DNA of 64,000 nucleotides from Mizuhopecten yessoensis (Eukaryota), in assembly GCF_002113885.1 (NCBI RefSeq), contig NW_018408785.1:289750-353749 (forward strand), in the 5' to 3' direction. The notes under the pieces are model-generated. The model was not told the origin of the DNA. It made no database searches and was given only the letters and a program-made list of their open reading frames with translations. Numbering within the stretch: position 1 is the first letter of the stretch; every line of letters begins with the position of its first letter. Both the position numbers and the translations under genes were made by a program. Below, in pieces: positions 657 through 38,623 of this stretch.

Positions 657-767
657 GAGAAGGACCAAGTCCAAAGAAGAAAAAGAAGGCTGATAAACCT
701 GTGGTACCAGATCTAGAGGGAAAAGATGAAAATGAAAACAAGCCTCAAGAGAAAGTCTCTGTTACAG
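657..767 (+). CDS. DDX24: DDX24 exon (Lys-rich N-terminal region)
   Basis: tttcag acceptor, GT donor at 768; [14 protein letters not shown]...; phase 1 joins the next exon. Confidence 0.8.
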
Positions 768-3700
768 GTATAATTAATTGCTGAATTTAAAAAAAAATCT
801 GTTTTGGTTTATTGTCTGAATGCAATGTTTCAAAACATCGAGTTTCTCTGTACCGTGTGTCAAAGCAATTTCAGGTTACTTTCTGACTGTGTCAAGCATG
901 CTTATGAAGCTTGAAATGGAATAATATAACTAGTACTATAATACCATAAGTCACGATCAACACTGTCAGTGTTGTAATCACCCGCTCACCAAAGCAGTAT
1001 AAAATGTACCAAAATTACAGTGTAATAATAAATATGTTTCATTGATAACATAAATGTTGTTTACCTTGTTGTTTTGTATTGAATTATAACATGATAATAA
1101 TGGGCTAATTAAAACAGATTTAACAGACTTACTGAGTAATTCTTGACTGTGAAAATGTTCTATAAATAGCATTGAAATGGGATAACTTTTATTCTGAGTT
1201 TTTGTATTGGTACATTAACTATACATTTTAGCTGAAATGATATCAATGATACATCTGATGACCAAACTGATCCCTCTTTACTTATTAACATGATGATGGT
1301 TTGTGTATTATATGACAGATATGGCTGCGTGGAAGAATATGCATGTACCAGCTCCAGTGCTGCTTGCACTAAAACAGGATGGATTTGCTGTACCCACCCC
1401 TATACAGACCCTCGCCATACCACACGCTATTAGAGACCGACTGGACATAGTTGGAGCTGCTGAAACTGTAAGTATGTAGACATGGTACATAATAATGTGT
1501 AACTGCTGAAACTGTAAGTGTGTAGACATGGTACATAATGATGTGTAACTGCTGAAACTGTAAGTGTGAAGACATGGTACATAACAATGTGTAACTGCTG
1601 GAACTGTAAGTGTGTAGACATGGTACATTATAATGCGTAACTGCTGAAACTGTAAGGGTGTAGACATGGTACATAACAATGTGTAACTGCTGGAACTGTA
1701 AGTGGGTAGACATGGTACATAATAATGCGTAACTGCTGAAACTGTAAGTTTCTAGACATGGTACATACTAATGTGCAACTGCTGGAACTGTAAGTGTGTA
1801 AACATGGTACATAATAATGTGGAACTGCTGAAACTGGAAGTGCGTAGACATGGTACATACTAATGTGTTGAAGACATGGTACATAACAACGTGTAACTGC
1901 TGGAACTGTAAGTTTGTAGACATGGTACATTCTAATGTGTAACTGCTGAAACTAAGTGTGTAGACATGGTACATAATAATGTGTAACTGCTGAAACTGGA
2001 AGTGTGTAGACCTGGTACATACTAATGTGTAACTGCTGAAACTGTAAGTGTGTAGACATTTTACATACTAATGTGTAACTGCTGAAACTGTAAGCGTGTA
2101 GACATGGTACATAATAATGTGTTAGACATGGTACATAATAATGTGTTAGACATGGTACATAATAATGTGTTAGACATGGTACATAATAATGTGTAACTGC
2201 TGGAACTGTGAGTGTGTAGACATGGTACATACTAATGTTTAACTGCTGGAACTGTAAGTTTGTAGACATGGTACATACTAATGTGCAACTGCTGAAACTG
2301 TAAGTGTGGAGACATGGTACATACTAATGTGTAACTGCAGAAACTGTAAGTGTGTAGACATGTTACATACTAATGTGTAACTGCTGAAACTAAGTGTGTA
2401 GACATGGTACATACTAATGGGTAACTGCTGGAACTGTAAGTTTGTAGACATGGTACATACTAATGTTTAACTGCTGGAACTGTAAGTGTGTAGACATCGT
2501 ACATACTAATGTGTAACTGCTTAAACTGTAAGTGTGTACACATGGTACATACTAATGTGTAACTGCTGGAACTGTAAGCGTGTAGACATGGTACATAATA
2601 ATGTGTAACTGCTGAAACTGGAAGTGCGTAGACATGGTACATACTAATGTGAAACTGCTTGAACTGTAAGTTTGTAGACATGGTACATACTAATGGGTAA
2701 CTGCTGGAACTGTAAGTGTGTAGCTGGAGAACATCTACATATATGTAACATGTCTACACACTTACAGTTTGAGCAGTTACACATTAGTATGTACCAGGTC
2801 TACACACTTACAGTTTCAGCAGGTACACATTAGTATGTACCAGGTCTACACACTTACAGTTTCAGCAGGTACACATTAGTATGTACCAGGTCTACACACT
2901 TACAGTTTCAGCAGTTGCACATTAGTATGTACCATGTCTACTCACTTACAGTTTCAGCAGTTACACATCATTATGTACCATGTCTACACACTTATAGTGA
3001 TATGTACTCCTCCGGTACTGATCTGTACTCCTCCGTTACTTATCTGTACTCCTCCGTTCCTTATCTGTTCTCCTCTGGTACTGATCTTTACTCCTCTAGT
3101 ACTAATCTGTACTCCTCTGGTACTGATCTTTACTCCTCTAGTACTAATCTGTACTCCTCCGGTACTAATCTGTACCCGGAGGAGTACAGATCAGTACCAG
3201 AGGGTAGACATGGTACATAATAATGTTTAACTGCTGGAACTGTAAGTGTGGAGCTGGAGAACATCTACATATATGTAACATGACTACACACTTACAGTTT
3301 CAGCAGTCTAGTACTGATCTTTACTCCTCTGGTACTGATCTGTACTGCTCCGGGTACAGATTAGTACCGGAGGAGTACAGATAAGTACTAGAGGAGTACA
3401 GATCAGTACTAGAGGAGTGTAAGTGTGTAGACATGGTACATTATAATGTGTAACTGCTGAAACTGTAAGGGTGTAGACATGTTACATAATAATGTGTAAC
3501 TGCTGGAACTGTAAGTGTTTAGATATGGTACATACTAATGTGTAACTGGTGAATCTAAGTGTGTAGACATGGTACATACTAATGGGTAACTGCTGGAACT
3601 GTAAGTTTGTAGACATGGTACATACTAATGTGTAACTGCTGAAACTGTAAGTGTGTAGACATGTTACATATATGTAGATGTTCTCCAGCTACATAAGTAT

Positions 3701-6700
3701 GCGTTCACATGGAAGATGGTGCAAAACAATTAAAGTGTTACTTTGCCCACATTGTTTATTAATCACATAAATATAATCCGACTGTAAAGGAAGATGACCT
3801 GATGAATCTACCACTTAGTTCACGCTGACTGTCAATTCCTGTCATAACTTTTATTTTCCCTGAAACATTTTAGTTTTCGCCAAGTAAATATTACATGGTT
3901 ATATATGTAACATTGAAGTGAACAAATCAAAATTAAAAACTACAATTAACCATCCACTATTAACCATCCACTATCAATAAATTACCTATTTCCCCTGGTA
4001 ATGTTAAGATGTACAATGTTAAACAAAATTGTATGTAAATGAAAAATGAAAGATATATACAAATTTACATGTACCATTCAATTACAGTTCATCACAGTAC
4101 TGGTGATAGAAGTACAAAGCTGGGTCTTCTGACAAGGCATTTTCTCATGAACATTGAAATAAATAATAAATGAATACAACATAAATTTCATGCTTTTTCT
4201 GGACTACCTTATTAATCTATAATGGGATTCTTTCTGAACTTTCATGTCCACAGGTCTTTGGGGTTTGTTGTTGTGAAGAATAAATATAAACGAACATTAA
4301 GTTTTATATCTGATTTGTTTTATTCTAGGGAAGTGGCAAGACTCTAGCGTTTGGTATCCCATTGATAGACAAGATCTTAAGAGTGAAACAGGAACAGGAA
4401 AACAGGAAGAAAAAGGGTGTCGAGGAAGAAGAGTGTGGCAGCGGCTCGGACATAGAACCGCAGGATGAAATGAATGATGAAATGAATGATGAAATAGACA
4501 ATGAAGATGACAATGAATCGGATAACGAAATGGTAGATTCTGGTGAAGAAAGTGAAGAGGAATTGCTGTTTGAGACATCTGATGAAGATGACGAGGAGGA
4601 AGAAGTGGAACAGGATGACACAGAGGAGGTTGATATAAGTGAGGACGAAAATGATGAAGAGGAATTAGGGAGTGAGGAAGAGGAGGAATTGGTTGAAGTA
4701 AGTTATGATCTACAAGCTGTGTTCTTAATCATTTCCATGAATTCTTTAGGTACAATACGTACTTGAGAATGAGATGATGCAGATATCAGTACCAGAGGAG
4801 TACAGATCAGGACCAGAGGAGTACAGATCAGTACCGGAGGAGTACATATCAGGACCAGAGGAGTACAGATCAGTACTAGAGGAGTACAGATTAGTACCGG
4901 AGGAGTACAGATTAGTACTAGAGGAGTACAGATAAGTACCAGAGGAGTACAGATTAGTACCAGAGGAGTACAGATCAGTACCAGAGGAGTACAGATCAGT
5001 ACTAGAGGAGTAAAGATTAGTACTAGAGGAGTACAGATCAGTACCAGAGGAGTACAGATTAGTACCGGAGGAGTACAGATCAGTACCAGAGGAGTAAAGA
5101 TCAGTACCAGAGGAGTACAGATCAGTACCAGAGGAGTACAGATCAGTACTAGAGGAGTACAGATCAGTACCAGAGGAGTACAGATTAGTACCGGAGGAGT
5201 ACAGATCAGTACTAGAGGAGTACAGATTAGTACCGGAGGAGTAAAGATCAGTACTAGAGGAGTAAAGATTAGTACCGGAGGAGTACAGATCAGTACCAGA
5301 GGAGTACAGATCAGTACTAGAGGAGTAAAGATCAGTACCAGAGGAGTACAGATAAGGAACGGAGGAGTACAGATAAGTAACGGAGGAGTACAGATCAGGA
5401 CTAGAGGAGTACAGATAAGTAACGGAGGAGTACAGATAAGTACCAGAGGAGTACAGATAAGTAACGGAGGAGTACAGATCAGTACAAGAGGAGTACAGAT
5501 TAGTACCAGAGGAGTACAGATCAGTACCAGAGGAGTACATATCAGTACCAGAGGAGTACAGATCAGTACCAGAGGAGTACAGATTAGTACTAGATGAGTA
5601 AAGATCAGTACCAAGTACAGATCAGGACCAGAGGAGTACAGATCAGTACCAGAGGAGTAAAGATCAGTACCGGAGGAGTAAAGATCAGTACCGGAGGAGT
5701 ACAGATCAGTACCAGAGGAGTACAGATAAGTACCAGAGGAGTACAGATAAGTAACGGAGGAGTGCAGATCAGTACAAGAGGAGTACAGATTAGTACCAGA
5801 GGAGTACAGATAAGTACCAGAGGAGTAAAGATCAGTACCAGAGGAGTACAGATTAGTACCAGAGGAGTACAGATAAGTACCAGAGGAGTAAAGATCAGTA
5901 CCAGAGGAGTACAGATCAGTACCAGAGGAGTACAGATAAGTACCAGAGGAGTAAAGATCAGTACCAGAGGAGTACAGATAAGGAACGGAGGAGTACAGAT
6001 AAGTAACGGAGGAGTACAGATAAGTACCAGAGGAGGACAGATAAGTAACGGAGGAGTACAGATCAGTACAAGAGGAGTACAGATTAGTACCAGAGGAGTA
6101 CAGATTAGTACCAGAGGAGTACAGATAAGTACCAGAGGAGTACAGATACGTAACGGAGGAGTACAGATCAGTACAAGAGGAGTACAGATCAGTACTAGAG
6201 GAGTAAAGAACAGTACTAGAGGAGTAAAGATTAGTACCAGAGGAGTACAGATCAGTACTAGAGTACAGATAAGTAACGGAGGAGTACAGATCAGTAAAAG
6301 AGGAGTACAGATTAGTACCAGAGGAGTACAGATAAGTACCAGAGGAGTAAAGATCAGTACCAGAGGAGTACAGATAAGGAACGGAGGAGTACAGATAAGT
6401 AACGGAGGAGTACAGATCAGTACTAGAGGAGGACAGATAAGTAACGGAGGAGTACAGATAAGTACCGGAGGAGTACAGATAAGTACCAGAGGAGGACAGA
6501 TAAGTAACGGAGGAGTACAGATCAGTACTAGAGGAGTACAGATTAGTACTAGAGGAGTACAGATCAGTACCAGAGGAGTACAGATAAGTACCAGAGGAGT
6601 AAAGATCAGTACCAGAGGAGTGCAGATCAGTACCAGAGGAGTACAGATCAGTACTAGAGGAGAGTACAGATCAGTACCGGAGGAGTACATATCAGTACCA

Positions 6701-9700
6701 GAGGAGTAAAGATCAGTACCAGAGGAGTACAGATTAGTACCAGAGGAGTACAGATAAGTACCAGAGGAGTAAAGATCAGTACCAGAGGAGTACAGATTAG
6801 TACCAGATGATTACAGATCAGTACCAGAGGAGTACAGATCAGTAACGGAGGAGTACAGATCAGTACTAGAGGAGTACAGATAAGTACCGGAGGAGTACAG
6901 ATAAGTACCAGAGGAGTACAGATTAGTAGTACAGATAAGTAACGGAGGAGTACAGATAAGTACCGGAGGAGTACAGATAAGTACCAGAGGAGTACAGATT
7001 AGTAGTACAGATAAGTAACGGAGGAGTACAGATAAGTACCGGAGGAGTACAGATAAGTACCAGAGGAGGACAGATAAGTAACGGAGGAGTACAGATAAGT
7101 ACCGGAGGAGTACAGATAAGTACCAGAGGAGTACAGATCAGTACCGGAGGAGTACAGATCAGTACCAGAGGAGTACAGATTAGTACCGGAGGAGTACAGA
7201 TAAGTACTAGAGGAGTACAGATCAGTACTAGAGGAGTACAGATTAGTACCAGAGGAGGACAGATCAGTACCAGAGGAGTAAAGATCAGTACCAGAGGAGT
7301 AAAGATCAGTACCAGAGGAGTAAAGATCAGTACTAGAGGAGGACAGATTAGTACCGGAGGAGTACATATCAGTACCAGAGGAGTAAAGATCAGTACTAGA
7401 TGAGTACAGATTAGTACCGGAGGAATACAGATAAGTACTAGAGGAGTACAAGAGGAGTACAGATCAGTACCGGAGGAGTACAGATAAGTAACGGAGGAGT
7501 ACAGATCAGTACCAGAGGAGTACAGATCAGTACTAGAGGAGTACAGATAAGTACATGAGGAGTACAGATCAGTACTAGAGGAGTACAGATTAGAACCGGA
7601 GGAGTACAGATCAGTACCAGAGGAGTAAAGATCAGTACTAGAGGAGTACAGATTAGTACCGGAGGAGTACAGATCAGTACTAGAGGAGTACAGATTAGTA
7701 CCGGAGGAGTACAGATCAGTACCAGAGGAGTACAGATTGATTCAAGGATACTAGATGATTATTAACAATATTTGAATTCTCAGGAGGACTATTCAGCTCA
7801 GGAAAGCAAAACATTTACTGTCAGATTAAAGGATAAGAATTAATGTTAAATTAAGTTGAAGGTTTCTTAAATTGCACTTTCTTTTAGGTAGATCCCTGAA
7901 TGATTATTTAAAGTACTGGTACAATCCACAAAAGTTACGTGTATAAATAAATGGGATGCAAAAATATTCTTGTACAAGCAATAAGTTTAAATTTTCCGAT
8001 TGTATTTATAAATATATTTTTTCCTAGGGTGATGGATTTGGATGTGTGAAGGTGATAGATGACGCTGACTTCTCAGATATTGATCCAAGTCTCCTGGGGC
8101 AGTTTGAGCCAGTGAAGACACCAAAGTATCCTCAGAAACCACCGATGGCCCTTATATTGGAGCCAACACGTGAACTGGCAGTACAGGTGAAGAACCACCT
8201 CCTCCGTATCATCAGGCATACTGATATCAAGGTCAGTGAGAGTCAAGTTTTGAATGATAAGGCGACAATATGCAATATGTCAAGTATTAATAATCAAAAA
8301 CATTATGTGAAGTGAATGTAAAGAACGTATTTTACAGTTACTTCTAGCGATACCTACCTTGTGTTAAAGCCAAGTCTTATCTACAGTAGCAGGAAAGTTA
8401 GATAATGATTTAAGTACATGCTAGATTACAACTATACAAAGGAAACTTGTCATGGTAGTATTGCCGCCTTATCATTCAAAAAGATGTTTTAGATTTATGA
8501 ATCCAAAATTTTCAAATCACAGTAATTCTGGTCTTTTTATTGTCTAAAGTCTGGCTAGAAAAATTGACAAGGTTCTTGTGTAAAACATGTTGTTAACCAG
8601 TCAACAACCCTCTTGATACAGCTTCAGAGTAAGTATGGTTTGTTGCAGGTGGTCACAGTTGTGGGTGGCCTGTCCATGGAGAAACAGCTAAGAGTCATGA
8701 AGAAGTGTCCAGAGGTGGTGGTGGCTACACCTGGGCGTCTGTGGGAGCTTGTACAACAGGTAAGATCACAGTAAAGGAGCATGCACAACAGGTAAGATCA
8801 CAACAGTGGAGCATGTACAACAGGTAAGATCAGAGTAAAAGAGCATGTACAACAGGTAAGATCACAACAGTGGAGCATGTACAACAGGTAAGATCAGAGT
8901 AAAAGAGCTTGTACAACAGGTAAGATCACATTAAAGTAGCATATACAACAGGTAAGATCACAGTAAAGGAGCATGTACAACAGGTAAGATCACAGTAAAG
9001 TAGCATGTACAACAGGTAAGATCACANNNNNNNNNNNNNNNNNNNNNNNNNNNNNNNNNNNNNNNNNNNNNNNNNNNNNNNNNNNNNNNNNNNNNNNNNN
9101 NNNNNNNNNNNNNNNNNNNNNNNNNNNNNNNNNNNNNNNNNNNNNNNNNNNNNNNNNNNNNNNNNNNNNNNNNNNNNNNNNNNNNNNNNNNNNNNNNNNN
9201 NNNNNNNNNNNNNNNNNNNNNNNNNNNNNNNNNNNNNNNNNNNNNNNNNNNNNNNNNNNNNNNNNNNNNNNNNNNNNNNNNNNNNNNNNNNNNNNNNNNN
9301 NNNNNNNNNNNNNNNNNNNNNNNNNNNNNNNNNNNNNNNNNNNNNNNNNNNNNNNNNNNNNNNNNNNNNNNNNNNNNNNNNNNNNNNNNNNNNNNNNNNN
9401 NNNNNNNNNNNNNNNNNNNNNNNNNNNNNNNNNNNNNNNNNNNNNNNNNNNNNNNNNNNNNNNNNNNNNNNNNNNNNNNNNNNNNNNNNNNNNNNNNNNN
9501 NNNNNNNNNNNNNNNNNNNNNNNNNNNNNNNNNNNNNNNNNNNNNNNNNNNNNNNNNNNNNNNNNNNNNNNNNNNNNNNNNNNNNNNNNNNNNNNNNNNN
9601 NNNNNNNNNNNNNNNNNNNNNNNNNNNNNNNNNNNNNNNNNNNNNNNNNNNNNNNNNNNNNNNNNNNNNNNNNNNNNNNNNNNNNNNNNNNNNNNNNNNN

Positions 9701-12700
9701 NNNNNNNNNNNNNNNNNNNNNNNNNNNNNNNNNNNNNNNNNNNNNNNNNNNNNNNNNNNNNNNNNNNNNNNNNNNNNNNATGTACAACAGGTAAGATCAC
9801 AACAGTGGAGCATGTACAACAGGTAAGATCAGAGTAAAAGAGCTTGTACAACAGGTAAGATCACATTAAAGTAGCATATACAACAGGTAAGATCACAGTA
9901 AAGGAGCATGTACAACAGGTAAGATCACAGTAAAGGAGCATGTACAACAGGTAAGATCACAGTAAAGTAGCATGTACAACAGGTAAGAACACAGTAAAGT
10001 AGCATGTACAACAGATAAGATCACAGTAAATGAGCATGTACAACAGGTAAGATCACAGTAAATGGGCATGTACAACAGGTGAGATCACAGTAAATGAGCA
10101 TGTACATCAGGTAATATCACAGTAAAGGAGCATGTACAACAGGTAAGATCACAGTAAATGAGCATGTACAACAGGTAAGATCACATTAAAGGAGCATGTA
10201 CCACAGGTAAGATCACAGTAAAGGAGCATGTACAACAGGTAAGATCACAGTAAATGAGCATGCACATCAGGTAAGATCACAGTAAAGGAGCATGTACAAC
10301 AGGTAAGATCACAGTAAAGGAGCATGTACATCAGGTAAGATCACAGTAAAGGAGCATGTACCACAGGTAAGATAACAGTAAATGAGCATGTACAACAGGT
10401 AAGATCACAGTAAAGGAGCATGTTCAACAGGTAAGATCACAAAAGTGGAGCATGTACAACAGGTAAGATCACAGTAAAGGAGCTTTTACAACAAGAAAGA
10501 TCACAATAAAGGAGCATGTACAACAGCTAAGGGCACTGTATTGGAGCTTGTACAACAGGTAAGATCACAACTATAAAGCTTGGAGAACAGGTATGGTCAC
10601 CATAGTGGGGCTTGTACGACAGGTATTGTTACAACAATAGAGCTTGTACAACAAGTAAATTCACACCAGTGGAGCTTGTACGCAAGTAAGTTCACAACAC
10701 TGGAGCTTGTACGACAGGTACGGTTTCAGTATTGAAGCTGGTACAACTGAATTTCACAGCAGGAAAGGTTACAACATTGAGACACATATACTATGTAAGG
10801 AAATTTCACAAGAAAGTTGAATTTCTAAAACTACAAGAGTTAAAATACATAAAAATAAAAAATATGTGACCAGCACAAAAATGAACATAGCAGGGTATAC
10901 AAGTACTGATGGGTAAGAACTGATTCAGGAAATGTTTTTGTGTGATAATCAAAAAGGAATTTTTTCTGCTTTATTATGATGATTTATTTATATTATTGTA
11001 GGACAACTCATACCTGTCACAGGTGTCAGAGATTAGGTGTCTGGTAGTCGACGAGGCAGACAGGATGATAGAAAAAGGACACTTCCAGGAGCTAACTCAC
11101 ATCCTCAACCACATCAACAGGTATGTATACCCAACTCACATCCTCAACCACATCAACAGGTATGTGTACCCTACTCACATCCTCAACAACAGGTATGTGT
11201 ACACTACTCACATCCTCAACCACATCAACAGGTGTACCGTACTTGTATTATCAATCACATAAATTTGTGCAAAGATGTATAATTCCACTTGCCATATACT
11301 TGGGTATATTTTCTGAAAATTATCAATATTTACTTTGAAAATACATTCATAGCTACGTAGGGCTCACAGAATTTTTCAAAAGCTGTATGCGAGCTAGTAT
11401 TGTAAATAAGAAGTTTGAACCCACAAATGTGTGTATATCCTTATTAAATCCACAACAACATCCACCAGTATCACACTCATCACATGATTAGTCCTAGAGC
11501 AAAAGGTCTATAACATATTTATAGTGATAGTCTCTACCTTGGTGTGTTATATGATGTGATGACTGTTGTAGAGATGCAGAGAAGAAACTAAAAAGACAAA
11601 CATTTGTGTTCTCCGCCACGCTAACGACTATCCACTCAGGACCCCACAGGCATCTCAACAAGAAGGTTAAGGTCACAGAGGAGCTGAAGCTGGGTTAGTG
11701 ACTCTTATGCCAAAATTTAAACTGATACAACATTTTCAAACGGGTGTCGATCCTTTTTTTTGTTTTTTTTGTTCTTTTAAGATTTTGTCAGCATCGTCAT
11801 TCTTGAACCATAGATATTTCTGGAGGAACTTACAAAATTTAAAATAGGTGTGCAATGTAGCATAATCAAGTCTGACACTTAGATCTTCAGCATTTATCAT
11901 AATTTTTACTAATTGTTTTTGGCTACTTTTGCATAATTTACAGAAAAGCTGATGAAAACAATTGGTCTAAAGGATCGACCCAAGATCATTGACCTCACAA
12001 GGAAGATTGGCACTGTAGAGACACTGACCGAGGCTCGTATCAACTGTACGATGGATGAGAAGGTCAGTAGTTCAATCACAGAGGAACAGATGGGGATGAT
12101 GATGATGATGAATATACTCACCACTCTGGTTTTACTTTTTACATCATTTTGGAGTTATGAAAAAGTGGAAAAAAAATCTTTAGTTAGTTTTTCGCATGTG
12201 TAACTAAATTTTTCAGATTCATCTTCAGAAACTGACTGAAATCCAATTCTACAATTCCATCTCAAATGGTTATTCCTTTCACCACTGTTGACCATAATAG
12301 ACTAATCCAGATCAATGCATGGTAGAGCCTACTAAAGTTACATAGGGGTGAAAGGGTTAAATAATGTTTGGCTTGTACAAACGCTGGTAGTTTGGTAACG
12401 GTTACTATCATACAGTCTTTTGGGGAGGTTATTGTTGCTTTGTTTCTTGGACCTAATTATATACATGTATTCATATATTGATCTTCTTGTGAATAAAACA
12501 CTTCTTTTTACTTGAAAGTGTCTTTAACAACTGTTAGTATGTTCATGTGCTGGAGCTAATGTTGAAACTATATAACTCAATTAAACAAAACGGAAAGATA
12601 TATTGAGCTAAGCAGTTTTAGTTGCATTTCACACACTTTCTCCCGCATTGGAAATGTGGAATGAGGGATATCTCCCTAATTGGAAATGTGGAATGAGAAA

Positions 12701-15700
12701 TATCTCCCTCATTGGAGGTTTCAGAGGTTGACTAACACCTATGTAACTGGCATGTTTTGATCATTATTAAATCTTAAGGAAGTTGTATAGATTAAAATTT
12801 AACGTTTTGAAAGCTAACAATGGCTGAATTAAATCAATCTGTGGTTGTTATGTGTTTGTGTGTCTAGGACCTGCACCTGTACTACTTCTTGAATCAGTAT
12901 CCTGGTCGTACTTTGGTGTTTGCCAACAGTAAGGACTGTATCAGGCGCCTTGTGTCTGTGTTAACCCTCCTAAACGTCAACCCTCTTCCACTTCATGCAG
13001 ACATGCACCAGAAACAGAGGCTTAAAAACCTCGAGAAATTCACAGGTTAGTGTTATCTTAATGACAGAATTTTTCTGAAGTTGATTTAAGAGTTTTGATT
13101 TTAGATATTCTTCGTATGAAACAAATTTCTCTGAAGTTGATTTCAGAGTTTTGATTCTAGAAATTCTTCGTATGAAACATTTCACCTAGCAGAATATCTG
13201 ATTATTAATGTTTCAGTAACTGGAAAAGATACTCCTGAAATATCATTAGCTATGAAATAACAACAGCTATGTCACCAACGTTTAATTGTCCAGTTAAACC
13301 CCTTTACAGCAGTGACATTGGAAATGAAAGTTTCAGGTTATTATAAGGGCATAAATTCTTCAGACTTAATTTGATTTCTATTACTGGAGTAGTAAACCAT
13401 TATTAAGAGACATTGAACCTTATGTCAAAGATCACATAAGAAAACCTTGTCAGCTATTATGTTAAGAGTTTTATGTTTTATTTTTCAGACAACCCCAGGG
13501 GTCTTTTATTGGCATCTGATGTTGCAGCGCGAGGTTTGGACATACCTAATGTCCAGCATGTTGTCCACTACCAGGTCCCACACACCGTTGAGGTCAGTCT
13601 CTTGGTGTTATTTCCAGAAATCTAGACAATATGTATTAATTGAAGAAATAATCAAATCTTGATAAAGATTGCCTAAATACCTACCACTCAGTTCCCTAAT
13701 TTGAGGCTGATGCTTGTCTAGATTCATTCAACTTTAATGAGGCTGCTGTGACCGATTGGCTGAAGGTTTATGGATAATATCTCTGGAAGTAATTATCAGA
13801 TTTCAATGAAATTTGTCTAGTATACTTTCTACACATGTAACTGGCTCATACTTGATGTTCAGCTAAATTCATAAAATATTTGGTGCCGCTGCTGTGATTT
13901 GATTGTCTGATGGTTTCGAGATGATATGTTTTGGGGGAATTACCAGATTTTATTAAATTTGCTAACATCCAAATGTCCTCACTCAAATCAGATGCTTGGT
14001 TGAATTAGAATAAATTCATTCAAAGAATTATCAGATTCTCTTCAAACATGCCCATTACATGTACCTTACACTTACAACCTTAGTCCAAGTGTGATTCCTG
14101 CCCAGATTTGTGAATAGCCAAACACACTTAATTTGCTGATGGTTTTTGAAAGTATCTATGACAGAATTATTGGACTTAGATGAGACTTGTCTGGTATACT
14201 TAAAACCCAAGTCTTTTAAAACTAATGTTCCGTCATTGCTTATTGCAGAGTTATCTTCTCTTGGGAGCAGGTATTGATTGGTAGGTCATTGGTTTGTGTG
14301 GGGATATTACGTCGGTTTCTCAAAAATTGACGACGTTACTCTCACAAACAAGGGACGTAACAATCAATCCCTGCTCCCAAGAGAAGATAACTCTGCAATA
14401 CGCAAAGACGGAATAATGAACTGACAATAACACAACAGCAAATATGTTCCATTTTATTCCATCATTTGTAAATTTGAATTTTTACTTGTTAAGAACTGAC
14501 ATGATTCGTTTTGTTTTGTTTTTTAGAGGGTTTTGTTTTGCCTATAACTGACAAAATATTTTTTTCCGTTGTTTGTCCAGAACTATATCCACCGCAGTGG
14601 GAGGACGGCCCGAGCCACCAAGGAGGGACTCAGTATCATGTTAGTAGGTCAGGGGGACGTCAAAAACTACCGCAAGGTCGTCGGCTCTCTCAACAGAAGT
14701 AAGTAAAGGTTACTCTTGTAAATATCAAATATCAATTTTCTGTCAACAGAAGTATTTTTAGCTCACTACAATGTTTCAATAACTAAGTTCATTTACAAAG
14801 ATAGACAATGATGACTCCTGTAAATATCTCATTATCAGACCTTATAAGATTTCTAGGACAGAAAACATTAAGTCATAGAAGAAAAGTCAGTACTGTAGTC
14901 AGCACTACAGAATTATATATGTTTCAGGCGAGGAGCTACCAGTGTTCCCAGTCAACCATCAGATCCTTACAGTCATCAAAGAGCGGGTCGATTTGGCCAA
15001 ACAGCTGGACAAGCTAGAACACAGGTAAGTAGGGTGGTCAAACTTGAACACAGGTAAGTAGGGTGGTCAAGCTAGAACACAGGTAAGTAGTGTGGTCAAG
15101 CTTGAACACAGGTAAGTAGGGGGGTCAAGCTAGAACACAGGTAAGTAGGGTGGACAAGCTAGAACACAGGTAAGTAGGGTGGTCAAGCTTGAACACAGGT
15201 AATTTAATTAGAGGGGTCAAAGTCTAATCACAGATACCTACTGAGATAAGGTCGACAACAACATTTTTGCAGTTAGATACAACCAATGTATTAACAAGAT
15301 AATGATTACCAGGTTTTTCAACTTTACTATCCCAAAATTAACAAACCATCAACAGATGCAGGTTGTTTTACTTTTGAAGATGGAATAATTCAAAGACTGG
15401 TTATTAATTCCATACTGGAATGTAATTATCTCCCTTATACCGATCCACTGTGGAATTTTAGGAAGTGACTTAATGTGCATATATTTAGAAAATGAAAGTG
15501 TATTTGATTTCATAGTAAGGCTTAATTTGTAATTACATGGTACTCTCAGTTCCACTTGATTAAGTCTCCTCTTTATATTTTTTATATTTATAAAGTTAAT
15601 AGATCAAAACTTTCTGAATCTTCTATTCAATTCAACTATTTTCTTCATACTGCTTTACAATGAGATATCAAATAAAAAGGAAAGATGACAGACACAATTT

Positions 15701-18700
15701 TACACATAATTTCTACTCTGTTGTAAATAATTACAAAACGGTACAGTGCTGTGTTTAAGAATCTGTATTTCATATTGTAGTGTGTCCAAACAGAAGCGAC
15801 AGAACAGCTGGTTTGAGAAGGCGTCCAAGGAGGTGGACATAGACCTGGATGAGACTCTGTATCCTTGTGTTACTATGGTTACACTGTTAGTGTAACTGAG
15901 GGACAAATGTGGATGTTTTTATGCACTCTACATATTATAAACGTACTCTTGGCATTACATATCCTAAAGAGATACATTTTTCATGCATAACAAGATGTAG
16001 TTTTCACACACTAGACATTACAAGAGGGCTTTCAAGTCAAATAACTCCTTAAATTTGGAGGGTTAGAACACATGTAAAAAATACTGGGTCTTTCAAATCC
16101 AAGAGTAAAACTTGATGGATTTTTTTATTTAGGGGTGGGGGGGGTGGGGTCAAAAATATGTTCGCAAGGATCAATTGAAAGCCCTGTCAGAAATACTACA
16201 ACAATATCTTTTACTAACAAGACATTACAGATCTTATAAAGATGTCTTTTACAAACATTACAAATACTACAAAGAGATGTTGACACAGTCTGGAATGATG
16301 TAGGTTACTTTCTCTATGTTAAGTCCTGTGTCACTTGCACTAGTACAAGGATGTATGCTTACCACTGGAACAGAATTAAAAAGGAACAGAATTAAAAAAT
16401 AACCTTGACCTTTGATCAGACTGAATGACCTTGGGGACTCACACTACCAGTCCACACAGAAGCAGCAAATTAAGTTCCTGAATGCAGAACTCAAGGCTCT
16501 GCTGAAGACATCAGTCATTCCGAAAAACTTTTCTGGGAAGTACCCAACAAGGACAGGACGCCTAGTGATACCCCACACCCAAGGTATGTACAGTAGATAC
16601 CGCACACCCAAGGTATGTACAGTATATAAGGCCTAGTGATACCCCACACACAAGGTATGTACAGTATATAAGGCCTAGTGTTACCCCACACCCAAGGTAT
16701 GTACAGTATATAAGGCCTAGTGATAACCCACACACAAGGTATGTACAGTATATAAGGCCTAGTGATACCCCACACCAAGGTATGTACAGTATATAAGGTC
16801 CAGGGATACCCCACACCTCAGGTATGTGCAGTATATAAGGCCTAGTGATACACCACACCCCAGGTATGTACAGTATATAAGGCCTAGTGATAACCCACAC
16901 ACAAGGTATGTACAGTATATAAGGCCTAGTGATACCCCACACCAAGGTATGTGCAGTATATAAGGCCAAGTGATACACCACACCCCAGGTATGTACAGTA
17001 TATAAGGCCCAGGGATACCCCACACCTCAGGTATGTGCAGTATATAAGGCCTAGTGATACCCCACACCCAAGGTATGTACAATATATAAGGCCTAGTGAT
17101 ACCCCACATCCAAGGTATGTACAGTATATAAGACCTAGTGATGTCACACACCCAAGGTATGTACCAGTGATGTCCAACACCCGAGGTATGTACAATATAT
17201 AAGGCCTAGCGATACCCCACACCCAAGGTATGTACAGTATATAAGGCTTAGTGATACCCCACACCCAAGGTATAGACAGTATATAAGGCCTAGTGATACC
17301 CCACACCCCAGGTGTGTACAGTATATAAGGCCTAGTGATACCCCACACCCAAGGTATGTACAGCATTTATGGCCTAGTTATGTACACTATATAAGACCTA
17401 GTGATACCCCACAACCAAGGTATGTACAGTATATAAGGCCTAGTGATTCCCCACCCCCAAGGTATGTACAGTATTTATGGCCTAGTTATGTACACTATAT
17501 AAGACCTAGTGACACCCCAAAACCAAGGTTTGTACAGTATTTAGGGTCTAGTTATGTACAGTATATAAGACCTAGTGATACCCCACCCCCAAGGTATGTA
17601 CAGTATATAAGACCTAGTGATCCCCCACACCCAAGGTATGTACAGTATTTATGGCCTTGTTATGTACAGTATATAAGGCCTAGTGATACCACACACCCAA
17701 GATATGTACAGTAGATACCCCACACCCAAGGTACGTACAGTATATAAGGCCTAGTGATAACCCACACCCCAGGTATGTACAGTATATAAGGCCTAGTGAT
17801 ACCCCACACCCAAGGTATGTACAGTATTTATGGCCTAGTTATGTACACTATATAAGACCTAGTGATACCCCAAAACCAAGGTTTGTACAGTATTTAGGGC
17901 CTAGTTATGTACAGTATATAAGACCTAGTGATACCCCACACCCAAGATATGTACAGTAGATACCCCACACCCAAGGTATGTACAGTATATAAGGCCTAGT
18001 GATAACCCACACCCCAGGTATGTACAGTATATACGGCCTAGTGATACCCCACACCCAAGACATGTACAGTATATAAGGCTTAGTGATAGCCCACACCCAA
18101 GGTATGTACAGTATATAAGGCCTAGTGATACCACACACACATGGTATGTACAGTATATAAGACCTAGTGATACCCCACACCCAAGGTATGTACAGTATTT
18201 ATGGCCTAGTTATGTACAGTATATAAGACCTAGTGATACCCCACAACCAAGGTATGTACAGTATTTAAGGCCTAGTTATGTACAGTATATAAGACCTAGT
18301 GATACCCCACACCCAAGGTATGTACAGCATATTAGGATCAATTTATTTGTTATTTGGATAATTTGACTGTAGAAATAGTTAATAAACATAACATTTTGCA
18401 TTTTCTTAATATGTTTATAATATTTCATTAAATCTATTTTAAGGTCCAGTAAATCTGTTAGTTACAATTAAGGGTGTAGTTTTGAGCCCAATCCGATTAA
18501 AATCATCTGTTACATTGCTTCTTTAACCTTTTACTTCCCTCAACATGTTCAGGCAATCTGATTAAAATCATATGTTACATGGCTTCGTTAACCTCGTACT
18601 ACGCCTGGACGATGTTCAGGCGGAGACATGTAACAGATGATTTTAATCAGATTGCATGTTCGGGTGAAGTAGGATGTAAGTAAAGTCATCAAATAGATGA

Positions 18701-18966
18701 TTGTAATCAGATTGTTTTTAGCCAGACTACATAGGATGTTATAAATGGATTACATTGTAAAAGATAATTTTCTTGGTTCTGAAAAGTTACACTCATATTT
18801 GTCAATATGATTTTTTACAGCTTTGACAAAAGATGCAATTGAGAATGTGAAAAATGACCGAAAGAGTCAACAGAAAATGATGGACAAAATACGAGTGGCC
18901 GCACTGACTGCTAAACCTGGGCCCGAGAAAAAGAAGAAAAAATGGAAAAAGAAATGGGGAAAATAA
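657..18966 (+). CDS. DDX24: ATP-dependent DEAD-box RNA helicase DDX24/MAK5, 15 coding exons, 5'-incomplete
   Basis: Phase-consistent manual splicing: 657-767, 1319-1467, 4329-4697, 8028-8231, 8649-8759, 11002-11120, 11572-11693, 11944-12062, 12868-13045, 13489-13592, 14581-14698, 14928-15024, 15781-15858, 16420-16583, 18821-18966. Motifs: Q (GFAVPTPIQ), [39 protein letters not shown]. The acidic insert between motifs I and Ia and the FSGKYPT tail fit DDX24. Confidence 0.95.
1319..1467 (+). CDS. DDX24: DDX24 exon (Q motif)
   Basis: [50 protein letters not shown]|gtaagt. Confidence 0.95.
1457..3692 (+). repeat. 46-bp minisatellite containing exon end + donor; partly inverted after ~2722
   Basis: Unit CTGCTGAAACT|GTAAGTGTGTAGACATGGTACATAATAATGTGTAA. 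Confidence 0.95.
4329..4697 (+). CDS. DDX24: DDX24 exon (motif I + acidic insert)
   Basis: ttctag|[15 protein letters not shown]..., D/E-rich tract, ...ELVE|gtaagt. Confidence 0.92.
4783..7738 (+). repeat. 21-bp intronic minisatellite (~3 kb)
   Basis: Unit GATCAGTACCAGAGGAGTACA; source of the spurious long ORFs here. Confidence 0.97.
8028..8231 (+). CDS. DDX24: DDX24 exon (motif Ia)
   Basis: GDGFGCVKV...[19 protein letters not shown]...DIK|gtcagt. Confidence 0.95.
8649..8759 (+). CDS. DDX24: DDX24 exon (GG, TPGRL)
   Basis: [37 protein letters not shown]|gtaaga. Confidence 0.95.
8744..10750 (+). repeat. 32-bp minisatellite containing exon end + donor (spans gap)
   Basis: Unit GGAGCATGTACAACAG|GTAAGATCACAGTAAA. 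Confidence 0.95.
11002..11120 (+). CDS. DDX24: DDX24 exon (DEAD box)
   Basis: [39 protein letters not shown]|gtatgt. Confidence 0.95.
11095..11238 (+). repeat. 39/33-bp tandem repeat of exon end + donor (4 donors)
   Basis: ACTCACATCCTCAACCACATCAACAG|GTATGT...; GT at 11121, 11160, 11193, 11232. Confidence 0.95.
11572..11693 (+). CDS. DDX24: DDX24 exon (SAT motif)
   Basis: [21 protein letters not shown]...LKL|gttagt. Confidence 0.93.
11944..12062 (+). CDS. DDX24: DDX24 exon
   Basis: [39 protein letters not shown]|gtcagt. Confidence 0.93.
12868..13045 (+). CDS. DDX24: DDX24 exon (motif IV)
   Basis: [21 protein letters not shown]...[18 protein letters not shown]|gttagt. Confidence 0.95.
13489..13592 (+). 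CDS. DDX24: DDX24 exon (motif V)
   Basis: [34 protein letters not shown]|gtcagt. Confidence 0.95.
14228..14413. mobile_element. MITE-like element with ~50-bp terminal inverted repeats
   Basis: TTCCGTCATTGCTTATTGCAGAGTTATCTTCTCTTGGGAGCAGG...CCTGCTCCCAAGAGAAGATAACTCTGCAATACGCAAAGACGGAA; TAATG on both flanks. Confidence 0.8.
14581..14698 (+). CDS. DDX24: DDX24 exon (motif VI)
   Basis: [22 protein letters not shown]...LNR|gtaagt. Confidence 0.95.
14928..15024 (+). CDS. DDX24: DDX24 exon
   Basis: [31 protein letters not shown]|gtaagt. Confidence 0.93.
15010..15202 (+). repeat. 29-bp tandem repeat of exon end + donor (7 donors)
   Basis: Unit CAAGCTAGAACACAG|GTAAGTAGGGTGGT; GT at 15025, 15054, 15083, 15112, 15141, 15170, 15199. 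Confidence 0.96.
15781..15858 (+). CDS. DDX24: DDX24 exon
   Basis: [25 protein letters not shown]|gtatcctt. Confidence 0.9.
15859..16419 (+). other. U12-type (minor spliceosome) GT-AG intron
   Basis: Donor GTATCCTT; branch point CCTTGAC at 16403-16409 with the A 11 nt from the 3' end; no real polypyrimidine tract; phase 2 matches both flanking exons. Confidence 0.88.
16420..16583 (+). CDS. DDX24: DDX24 exon
   Basis: [10 protein letters not shown]...[20 protein letters not shown]|gtatgt. Confidence 0.92.
16560..18330 (+). repeat. 42-bp minisatellite containing exon end + donor
   Basis: Unit GGCCTAGTGATACCCCACACCCAAG|GTATGTACAGTATATAA, with shorter and longer variants. Confidence 0.95.
18489..18715. 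mobile_element. Nested pair of short inverted-repeat (MITE-like) elements
   Basis: CAATC(C/T)GATTAAAATCAT at 18490 and 18554; reverse complements ending ~18655 and ~18714. Confidence 0.6.
18821..18966 (+). CDS. DDX24: DDX24 terminal coding exon
   Basis: ttttttacag|LTKDAIENV...[12 protein letters not shown]; AATAAA overlaps the stop, ATTAAA at 19081. Confidence 0.85.
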
Positions 18967-36266: not shown

Positions 36267-38623
36267 TTATGACCAACCATACAGCAGTGTCTCCCACTGA
36301 TGAAGGTCTCTCTTTCCAATCATGTGTCTTGTCTTGCACCTGAAAAACACAAAACACAAATGTTCATTAATATTCACAACGCATATGAATTCCCTATTCA
36401 TATACTTCATTTCATACAATTTATAACCAATCAGTTAATTAAATCTATAAAGTACTGGATAATTCAAGAGCTAGTCTCTCCTACCAGTAAGATGGTTTAC
36501 CGTATGTCACTACTTTTAAAAGGTAATGATTTTATTTTAAGATTTATTTTCCATTTAAGGATTGAAACAGTGAGTGTTCTCAAACGAACGTTTACACGCG
36601 CAATAAATAACAATCTCATAGTTATTCACAGAGATATGCAATCCTTCTAGGTTAGGCCATTCAATATTTCCAGGATAGGCCGACTTTGAGTGAAGCATTA
36701 CAAATCGAACCAATACTTGATTATCAGCAGACCGGTTACTGGACACCTTACGAACGGTATAACTTAGTGTTTCTCTCACCATAACACTCTCACCGATGTA
36801 GTTCAAAGCTTAGTGAGAAATTTACGGACTAAAGAAATAAAATGCATAGTGTATATAATGTCGAAATTCTAATAGCTAATGTTGGCCAAAAGTAATAGGA
36901 TACATTGTAAGGAATAGATATTTATTGGTTAATAGCCAGAAATGACTTGCCATGGACCTATCATATTTCACGTTATTGATATAGAGAATCTTAGTTTAGG
37001 TCCAAATATAGCTGTAACAAATTGTCTGGTCCCTGTGCCTGGCTAACTACGAGGACGTTAACCCACAAACAAACAAAACCATCATCGGTACCGCGAGTTA
37101 GACCTCAAATAAGGCTATATCAAGTGTACCTACCTTGGAATATTTGACCTGTCTGTTCTTGCCGTTTCTTTATCCGCAGTTGGACTTTCTGGCTCATGGC
37201 TAAGGTCCGCCAAGCTAGAGACTATCGTGTTTTTTTTTATGGTTTTTGGTGTTCGGAGAACCCCGTCGTCTGTCGTCGCTGCCTCATGTTCATCCTCTAC
37301 TGATTGTTCGTTGACTACTGGTATGTTATCGTCGTCTGTCATCGTTTCATCATTCTCTACAGTGCTTTCATATACGATTAATATTTGGTCGTATGTCGTC
37401 AATATGGATGCGTCATCTTCTACTTTTTGTTTGTTGATTTCAAGTTTGTAAGTGTCGCCTGTCACCGCTAACTTATTTTTATCCTCTATAGATTTGTCTT
37501 TAATTCTGTGAGTGAAATAACAAAAAAATGTTAATCAGATTTGGCAAAGAACAAACAATGGAAAACGAGAAAGCAATTCATTCATGACACACCAACAAAC
37601 CAAAGGTAAATTGTTCATATAAGATGACATTATTTCGCATATTTATCGTGAAGCATTGCTTACCTTTTCTACACCCACAACACCCTTCCCCACCCCATTA
37701 CCCACCAAACCAACCAGACATCTGTACCTTTTATTCACAACTATGGAAACATATATTTTTTTCAAAAGCAATTACCCCATTTTTGAGTTAATCAATAAAC
37801 ATTCAAATTGGGAAATAGTATATCGCAAAGGATTTAAAAACAATTACAGGGGAAAAGACCTTAAATATGTCCTGAATTAGAAATGAAATCACTGCTGGGT
37901 AAGGTACTGTGCAATGTTTGGTTCGATGGTGCAATACCATTTATAACCACCTCAGTGTTGAAATATGTTTTTCCAAGGATTATTTTTTTAATCAATTTAT
38001 TGTTTATTTTAGTGTTAGATATACGCCATTGACTTTCCAATGAGGGAGGATTATTAATTTATTACGTCTAAATTGTGAGACACACAACAAAAATATCCAG
38101 AACTGGAAACCGTAGCTCAATGTAAAATTGGTCATGTCATCGGCAATACGTATTCTATTTAGCTTGTTAAAAACTTCTACCTCGAGTGTTCGCTTTTCAA
38201 TTACATGGTTTGACATTAGATATACCATTATGTTAGCCTATGTGCTTTCTTCCAAATATTCATGTTGAACAGTTCACAATGAATTGATGAAATTTTTCCT
38301 TTCAGTTTTTCGGTTAAAATACATGTTTGAAGCAGTACAAAATAAGTACCCGTTCAATGTCATTTTGAACATATCCCGATCCCAAGTAAATATTATATCA
38401 CCCTTATTAAGTTAGTATTATTACAAGTGTATATCCGTTTTTGCATTAAAGCTAACAAATATCGATGACATTTGGTCAATATACAATTTTGAATTACTTA
38501 ATGTTTTTGCCTGTCAAACGCCAAAAACTTAACCCGTTGAAATACTTACATGTATCTGACATGTGAAAAGTCTAGTATCATAATGGTAGCGATGACCAGC
38601 CATAAAACACGTCCAGTATCCAT
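36267..38623 (-). CDS. Putative secreted peptide precursor A2 (172 aa)
   Basis: Exons 38623-38550 (MDTGRVLWLVIATIMILDFSHVRY), 37505-37134, 36339-36267 (...MIGKRDLHQWETLLYGWS*). Confidence 0.68.

What the first reader, a model, noticed from the sequence alone, without database searches (positions are those of the whole stretch)
1457..18330. Five unrelated minisatellites each built from an exon end plus its own 5' splice site
Seen: arrays of 46, 32, 39, 29 and 42 bp start inside the exons ending at 1467, 8759, 11120, 15024 and 16583. Each unit copies the last ~11-26 exonic nt, the GT donor and some intron. The units have no common consensus beyond the donor, and I saw no array at an acceptor. 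Five of 14 donors is hard to attribute to chance. Inference: a mechanism seeds or expands tandem duplications specifically at donors (e.g. transcription- or splicing-coupled breaks or slippage), or donor-side duplications are the only boundary duplications tolerated because the first copy keeps the reading frame. Either way the introns now hold dozens of decoy U1 sites. I do not know of a description of this as a systematic phenomenon.
Basis: partly seen in the sequence, partly recalled or inferred. Interest (0 to 1): 0.9.

Follow-up and report, generated by a model that had tools for sequence, protein, structure and literature searches.

The report
Splice-donor minisatellites in scallop DDX24
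Five introns of the Yesso scallop's DDX24 gene open with tandem copies of the preceding exon end plus its splice donor; this is a known kind of repeat (amphioxus 'mirages', human F7 intron 7), the cell still splices at the first copy where I could test it, and the one new point is that two or three of these arrays are older than the split between scallop subfamilies.

Summary
The window is Mizuhopecten yessoensis DDX24. Five of its 14 donors are spanned by the first unit of a minisatellite (46, 32, 39, 29 and 42 bp, with 11-27 exonic nt), a sixth donor has one relic copy, and no acceptor has an array. RNA reads at the two testable donors use only the first copy.

The architecture is published: amphioxus mirages and human F7, IFI6, CBS, LMNB2 and PDGF. 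This scan also noted it before in other genes of this genome.

The arrays are not five recent events. Those at exons 7 and 16 sit at the same donors, with the same unit junction, in Ylistrum and Pecten (exon 16 only as a relic in Pecten). Exon 14 has a weak relic in Pecten. No free intronic array is shared between species. Nine non-scallop orthologues show one donor and one acceptor array, with about two of each expected, so donor-specific seeding is not supported.

Best reading: tolerated by-products of repeat-rich introns that last a long time and may occasionally exchange sequence with the exon end. The gap at 9027-9779 is intronic and was not filled.

The parts
657..18966 (+). DDX24 DEAD-box helicase gene, exons 3-17 of 17 (exons 1-2 lie upstream of the window); 14 donors in the window
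   Evidence: 100% identity to P0167, Mizuhopecten yessoensis DDX24; orthologues have 17 exons; joints in RNA from 11120 to 16420
1457..3670 (+). Exon 4 donor array: 46-bp unit = 35 nt intron + 11 nt exon end; about 27 clean copies to 2723, a jumbled stretch, then 5 more; found only in Mizuhopecten
   Evidence: not tested with reads
2719..3418 (.). Inverted copy of the end of the 46-bp array and inverted or direct pieces of the 21-bp array of the next intron, inside the 46-bp array; probable assembly artefact
   Evidence: the artefact reading is inference
4785..7737 (+). 21-bp x about 141 intronic array that spans no splice site (starts 88 nt after the 4697 donor); counter-example in the same gene
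8744..10747 (+). Exon 7 donor array: 32-bp unit = 16 nt intron + 16 nt exon end; contains the gap 9027-9779; homologous arrays at the same donor in Pecten (35-36 bp) and Ylistrum (32-33 bp)
11094..11233 (+). Exon 8 donor array: 39-bp unit = 12 nt intron + 27 nt exon end, 3.7 copies; spare donors at +39 and +72 are in frame and stop-free but not seen used; Ylistrum has a 41-bp x 15 array at the same donor
14739..14754 (+). Single relic copy of the exon 13 end and donor (15/16 match), 53 nt into the intron; Ylistrum (109 bp) and Mytilus (47 bp) have arrays with other unit lengths at this donor
15003..15202 (+). Exon 14 donor array: 29-bp unit = 7 nt intron + 22 nt exon-derived, 6.8 copies; weak relic of the unit at the start of the Pecten intron
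16560..18332 (+). Exon 16 donor array: first unit 29 bp, then 42-bp unit = 18 nt intron + 24 nt exon end, with 66- and 71-bp higher-order variants, about 36 copies; 44-bp x 43 homologue in Ylistrum, two-donor relic in Pecten
9027..9779 (.). Assembly gap inside the exon 7 array; not filled

Best explanation
These are exon/intron-boundary minisatellites of the mirage or F7 type. (1, inferred) Scallop introns undergo frequent short tandem duplication and expansion; about half of the DDX24 intron DNA in Mizuhopecten and Ylistrum is tandem repeat. Now and then a 30-110 bp duplication straddles a splice site. (2, shown at two donors) A donor-straddling duplication leaves the first unit as the intact exon end and the spliceosome keeps using it, so the mRNA is unchanged and the array is tolerated. 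(3, shown for exons 7 and 16, likely for 14) Once present, such arrays can last since before the Chlamydinae/Pectininae split, growing and shrinking by lineage, whereas free intronic arrays are lineage-specific. A gene therefore collects them slowly, and five in one gene is the upper tail of that process. (4, suggested by three sites) Array and exon end occasionally exchange sequence by unequal crossover or conversion. The spare donors have no shown function.
For: Tandem-repeat share of introns 0.54 (includes the 753-N gap) and 0.52. Joints 11120-11572 (54 reads) and 15024-15781 (71 reads), with zero RNA depth in the bins at 11151-11341 and 15162-15352. Array-bearing exons have the same lengths in all three scallops. 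Same unit junctions across species at exons 7 and 16; arrays keep exon alleles that the species' own exon has lost (Pecten exon 7 -10 and -7, Ylistrum exon 16 -20, Mizuhopecten exon 14 -20). Shared as arrays: 2-3 of 6 donor events against 0 of 16 free arrays, Fisher P 0.065-0.013. Acceptor arrays also exist. GT decays in the copies (6 of 14 intact in Ylistrum exon 8, 20 of 25 in Mizuhopecten exon 4). The same behaviour is published for F7 and amphioxus (PMC1557585, PMC3087553).
Against: In the three scallop genes 10 of 26 arrays span a donor and none clearly spans an acceptor. The exon 13 donor was duplicated with three different unit lengths in three lineages, which hints at a donor preference. 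GT and +3..+6 are slightly better kept than +7..+12 in most arrays. The persistence contrast rests on few events, and diverged free arrays might simply be unrecognisable. Donors 1467, 8759 and 16583 were not tested with reads, and NMD would hide use of poisoned copies.
Confidence: 0.62

Rival explanations
1. Mutational bias: a transcription- or splicing-coupled process (for example R-loops or paused polymerase at exon ends) seeds tandem duplications preferentially across 5' splice sites.
For: 5 seen against 0.54-1.0 expected in the window; 10 donor and 0 acceptor arrays in three scallops; the exon 13 donor duplicated three times with different units; several other genes of this genome noted with 3-4 donor arrays (unchecked notes).
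Against: The window was picked for the pattern, and orthologous arrays are not independent. Non-scallop orthologues show 1 donor and 1 acceptor array, about 2 expected each. Free arrays are not closer to donors than to acceptors (7 of 16). Donor versus acceptor counts are not significant (5:0 P 0.06; 8:2 P 0.11). No shared motif survives correction.
Confidence: 0.2
2. Selected function: the arrays are kept because the spare donors bind U1 (protection from premature cleavage, tuning of splicing) or feed unproductive splicing and NMD as DDX24 regulation.
For: Long retention at exons 7 and 16; most copies keep the true donor 9-mer; human IFI6 and CBS use second and third copies (PMC1557585).
Against: Arrays are absent, or reduced to relics, at the same donors in other scallops and bivalves. 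Copy number differs widely between species, and GT is lost in many copies. No use of spare donors was seen, including the in-frame pair at exon 8 (95% upper bound about 5%).
Confidence: 0.1
3. Pure chance with no persistence or seeding bias: a repeat-rich genome scanned over many windows yields such a gene now and then.
For: At P 2.5e-4 to 4e-3, a genome with tens of thousands of genes would hold several to many such genes.
Against: It does not explain why donor arrays, and no free arrays, are shared between species.
Confidence: 0.07
4. Assembly artefact.
For: A gap with near-identical flanks in the 32-bp array and an inverted jumble in the 46-bp array.
Against: Homologous arrays in gap-free assemblies of two other genera; DNA contigs of two other individuals run into the exon 8, 14 and 16 arrays, break there, and show raised depth at exons 8 and 16; copies are heterogeneous (84-91% matches). 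Only copy numbers and the jumble are doubtful.
Confidence: 0.01

Closest known systems
Amphioxus 'mirage' minisatellites (Adh3, globins BflGb6 and BflGb9, troponin C, PGBD5; PMC3087553, PMC3902484; the original Adh paper, Canestro et al. 2002, was not held and is cited through these)
   Same: Tandem repeats whose unit spans an exon-intron boundary; unit lengths 10-160 bp; several in one gene (two in PGBD5); many copies keep splice signals; normal splicing is undisturbed.
   Different: Here in a mollusc, five in one gene and all on the donor side. I show sharing between genera of two subfamilies; the papers I read report only haplotypes and two Branchiostoma species.
Human donor-spanning VNTRs: F7 IVS7 (37 bp), IFI6/6-16 intron 2, CBS IVS13, LMNB2, PDGF intron 4 (PMC1557585)
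   Same: The first monomer spans the exon/intron boundary, the donor is reiterated in the intron, and the most upstream site is used (F7, LMNB2, PDGF).
   Different: One such array per gene; IFI6 and CBS also use downstream copies, which I did not see here; the scanning mechanism was tested in mammalian cells, not in scallop.
Internal tandem repeats at exon-intron boundaries in human segmental duplications (PMC2812944)
   Same: A systematic survey showing tandem repeats at exon-intron boundaries (27 intron modifications).
   Different: There the repeats create new introns or alternative transcripts; here the gene structure is unchanged (17 exons in three scallops).

Membership tests
Mirage / boundary-spanning minisatellite | Head-to-tail tandem array with a minisatellite-size unit | tested here: met
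   periods 46, 32, 39, 29, 42
Mirage / boundary-spanning minisatellite | Unit is a copy of the gene's own exon-intron boundary, and the terminal unit is the authentic boundary | tested here: met
Mirage / boundary-spanning minisatellite | Many copies retain the splice signal | tested here: met
Mirage / boundary-spanning minisatellite | Regular splicing at the authentic site is undisturbed | tested here: met
   for donors 11120 and 15024; the other three rest on the database protein and orthologue exon lengths
Mirage / boundary-spanning minisatellite | Length polymorphism between alleles | tested here: inconclusive
   a 6-nt insertion at 11186 in run X5 and much higher contig depth over the 39-bp array in X6; contig depth is not a copy number
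Mirage / boundary-spanning minisatellite | Somatic instability (reported for amphioxus Adh3) | not testable with these tools
   needs single-molecule typing across tissues of one animal
F7-type donor VNTR with oriented scanning | Downstream copies are functional but outcompeted; loss of the first donor activates the next | not testable with these tools
   needs minigene mutagenesis
IFI6/CBS-type VNTR with alternative donor use | Transcripts spliced from downstream copies | tested here: inconclusive
   none seen against 54 and 71 first-donor reads (upper bounds about 5% and 4%); 7 minor joint rows were not shown, and NMD could hide poisoned forms
   nine non-scallop orthologues, 1 donor, 1 acceptor, 1.97 expected each; no excess, but the sample is small and not from scallops

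The most novel reading that the evidence does not exclude
Donor-anchored minisatellites outlive free intronic arrays because the selected exon end anchors them, lasting on the order of 100 million years, and they exchange sequence with the coding exon, so that variants arising in intronic copies are written into the protein (candidate: Ile to Met near the end of Ylistrum exon 16, where the exon's derived base is an old array variant also seen in two Mizuhopecten copies and the Pecten relic). This would give scallops a genome-wide excess of arrays at donors without any donor-specific mutation.
Probability: 0.25. Interest if true: 0.6.

Novelty: new member of a known kind. Interest (0 to 1): 0.3.

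Why it matters
As it stands, this is a dense example of a known repeat class. It offers natural test cases for how the first of many identical donors is chosen outside mammals; exon 8 is the cleanest, because its spare donors are in frame and stop-free. If the long persistence and array-to-exon exchange hold genome-wide, intronic repeats would be a small but new source of coding change and would bias substitution patterns at exon ends in repeat-rich genomes. In practice such arrays also break short-read assemblies and can mislead gene prediction.

Tried and rejected
Micro-exon at 7784-7831: open frame but no GT donor at that end, and absent from P0167 and its orthologues; rejected.

Shared GTAC motif in repeat units: 10 of 27 against 3.7 expected, P 0.005, not significant over 136 four-mers; rejected.

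General 5' bias of free arrays within introns: 7 of 16 closer to the donor; rejected.

Strict selection on GT in copies: mismatch rates at GT 0-0.29, GT often lost; not supported, though +7..+12 is usually more variable.

Pecten exon 4 'acceptor array' (42 bp x 2.5): degenerate, overlapping the exon by 3-4 nt; not counted. Haliotis 81-bp x 63 array: ends at the acceptor and repeats it but carries at most 1 exon base; counted as abutting only. Exon 14 relic in Pecten: 0 of 170 other intron starts reach its score but the best is only one point lower, and it does not pass the whole-intron test; weak.

Rfam on the window: no hit. Pfam on three downstream ORFs: no hit. The Canestro 2002 and Wang 2017 papers are not held. 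The Ostrea look-up failed. The Tegillarca gene mapped only in part.

Full report
Gene and species. Positions 657-18966 hold exons 3-17 of a DEAD-box helicase (Pfam DEAD and Helicase_C on single exons). An exon search, cluster look-up and a homologue search with a database protein named it DDX24. The Mizuhopecten yessoensis protein P0167 matches the window exon by exon at 100% wherever the alignment stays inside an exon.

The gap, tested first. The N run at 9027-9779 lies inside the 32-bp array in the intron after 8759. Both flanks carry the same unit on the same strand. The 170 nt after the gap match 8845-9014 at 169 positions, 156 of them in one exact run. So the two contig ends may be the same DNA read twice, or two copies of a higher-order repeat; continuity and length stay unknown. 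Reading frame is not at stake: the exons either side are adjacent in P0167, and the gap-free Pecten and Ylistrum genes have a single intron there.

Observation. All five arrays are real and start inside the stated exons. Unit make-up (intron + exon nt) is 35+11, 16+16, 12+27, 7+22 and 18+24. Most copies keep the donor 9-mer of the true site. A sixth donor, 14698, has one relic copy at 14739-14754 (15/16; 0 of 170 other intron starts score as high). No acceptor has a nearby copy. The gene also has free arrays, the largest being 21 bp x about 141 at 4785-7737. Tandem repeats, with the gap, make up 54% of its intron length. If arrays fall at random on tolerated positions, 0.54-1.0 should span a donor, so five gives P 2.5e-4 to 4e-3. 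The window was chosen for this pattern out of a whole genome, so this figure does not prove a genome-wide bias.

Splicing. Two raw RNA runs laid on 10960-16660 confirm eight joints, among them 11120-11572 (32 + 22 reads) and 15024-15781 (37 + 34 reads). Depth is zero in the bins at 11151-11341 and 15162-15352. No joint from a downstream copy is listed, though 7 minor rows were not shown. Upper bounds are about 5% and 4%. Use of a later copy would meet a stop within 4-15 nt at exons 4, 7 and 14, and a frameshift then a stop at exon 16. At exon 8 the copies at +39 and +72 are in frame and stop-free, so their absence cannot be put down to NMD. Donors 1467, 8759 and 16583 were not tested by joints. 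They rest on P0167 and on identical exon lengths in the orthologues (149, 111, 164 nt). DNA contigs from two other individuals run into the exon 8, 14 and 16 arrays and break there, with raised depth at exons 8 and 16, so those arrays are not private to this assembly.

Orthologues. I mapped DDX24 exons exactly in Pecten maximus, Ylistrum balloti and nine other animals. Ylistrum has donor arrays at exons 7 (33 bp x 26), 8 (41 x 15), 13 (109 x 2.4) and 16 (44 x 43). Pecten has one at exon 7 (36 x 5), a clear relic at exon 16 and a weak one at exon 14. At exons 7 and 16 the point where intron sequence joins exon-derived sequence is the same in the different species. The arrays also keep bases that the species' own exon has since lost: Pecten exon 7 at -10 and -7, Ylistrum exon 16 at -20, Mizuhopecten exon 14 at -20. 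These arrays were therefore inherited, not re-seeded. Mizuhopecten belongs to Chlamydinae, and Pecten and Ylistrum to the Pectininae clade (PMC11354973). One clock puts even the Amusium-Pecten split at about 130 million years (PMC10225492); from memory, other clocks give younger dates. Exon 8 is unresolved (shared or recurrent), exon 4 is found only in Mizuhopecten, and exon 13 was duplicated with three different unit lengths in Mizuhopecten, Ylistrum and Mytilus. None of 16 free intronic arrays is shared as an array between the scallops, against 2-3 of 6 donor events (Fisher P 0.065 to 0.013).

Exchange with the exon. At three sites an exon allele found in only one species also occurs in that species' array: Ylistrum exon 7 at -4 (21 of 21 copies), Mizuhopecten exon 14 at -9 (3 of 6) and Ylistrum exon 16 at -14 (39 of 40; Ile to Met). 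The last variant also occurs in two Mizuhopecten copies and in the Pecten relic, so it is older in the array than in the exon. This fits occasional conversion or unequal exchange, but three sites cannot exclude parallel mutation.

Donor versus acceptor. In nine non-scallop orthologues, which were not picked for the pattern, there is one donor array and one acceptor array (both in Mytilus: 47 bp x 3 and 68 bp x 13, the latter copying 35 exon nt), with about two of each expected. Haliotis has an 81-bp x 63 array that ends at an acceptor and repeats it. In the three scallops the raw count is 10 donor to 0 acceptor among 26 arrays, but these are not independent and include the picked gene. Collapsed ratios are not significant. 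Earlier, unchecked notes of this scan report both donor and acceptor arrays in other genes of this genome; I used them as leads only.

What is known. Amphioxus Adh3, globin, troponin C and PGBD5 genes carry tandem duplications of 5' or 3' exon boundaries, named mirages, that do not disturb splicing and were proposed to be general in cephalochordates (PMC3087553, PMC3902484). Human F7, IFI6, CBS, LMNB2 and PDGF each have a minisatellite whose first unit spans a donor. [quoted passage not shown] A survey of human segmental duplications also lists boundary repeats (PMC2812944). I found no paper that counts them genome-wide in molluscs or reports retention across subfamilies, within the limits of the library.

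Verdict. Real, and a new member of a known kind. Most likely these are tolerated, long-lived by-products of very repeat-rich introns (0.62). Donor-specific seeding (0.2) and selected function (0.1) remain open but are unsupported. Interest 0.3. The persistence-and-exchange reading (probability 0.25) would deserve 0.6.

Noticed in passing
window 15859-16419: U12-type (minor spliceosome) GT-AG intron: the donor starts GTATCCTT and a CCTTGAC branch-site motif lies near the acceptor. The joint is confirmed by 49 RNA reads, and the GTATCCT donor is kept in all eight other molluscs checked.
   Followed up: yes
window 2719-3418: Inverted copy of the end of the 46-bp array joined to inverted and direct pieces of the 21-bp array that otherwise lies 1.4-4 kb downstream; looks like gap filling with chimeric mate-pair reads, but a real rearrangement is not excluded.
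   Followed up: partly
L003:13380-14285 and L003:15030-15183 (Mytilus trossulus DDX24): An acceptor array (68 bp x 13) before exon 12 and a donor array (47 bp x 3.3) after exon 13 in the same gene.
   Followed up: partly
L007:11440-16543 (Haliotis asinina DDX24): An 81-bp x 63 array whose last unit ends at the exon 13 acceptor, so the intron holds about 60 copies of the acceptor sequence.
   Followed up: partly
L002:22194-26162 (Ylistrum intron 15): 20-bp and 79-bp arrays, the first starting 7 nt after the U12-type donor; the Mizuhopecten and Pecten introns open with similar-looking single-copy sequence.
   Followed up: no
window about 20500-60900: Four or five diverged copies (70-94% identical) of a roughly 9-12 kb block, each with minus-strand open frames of 100-150 aa (for example 37130-37465, 46156-46488, 58571-59014) and a 60/121-bp internal repeat; no Pfam hit. 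Possibly a tandem gene family, partly decayed.
   Followed up: partly
window 12275-12361 and about 14230-14415: Short, very high-copy interspersed elements in DDX24 introns (contig depth above 100,000, and many unrelated RNA reads); the second has inverted ends, like a MITE.
   Followed up: no
window 53180-53430: Frame that reads like a fragment of a tyrosine-recombinase or Crypton-type element (resemblance from memory only; no Pfam hit), flanked on both sides by a 21-bp minisatellite (52869-52984, 53474-54180).
   Followed up: no
L005, L007, L009 upstream flanks: NSMCE1 (Nse1) lies head-to-head just upstream of DDX24 in amphioxus, abalone and oyster.
   Followed up: no
window 11151-11233: Contig depth over the 39-bp array is 30-40 times the single-copy level in two other individuals, so the array may be much longer than the 3.7 copies assembled.
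   Followed up: no
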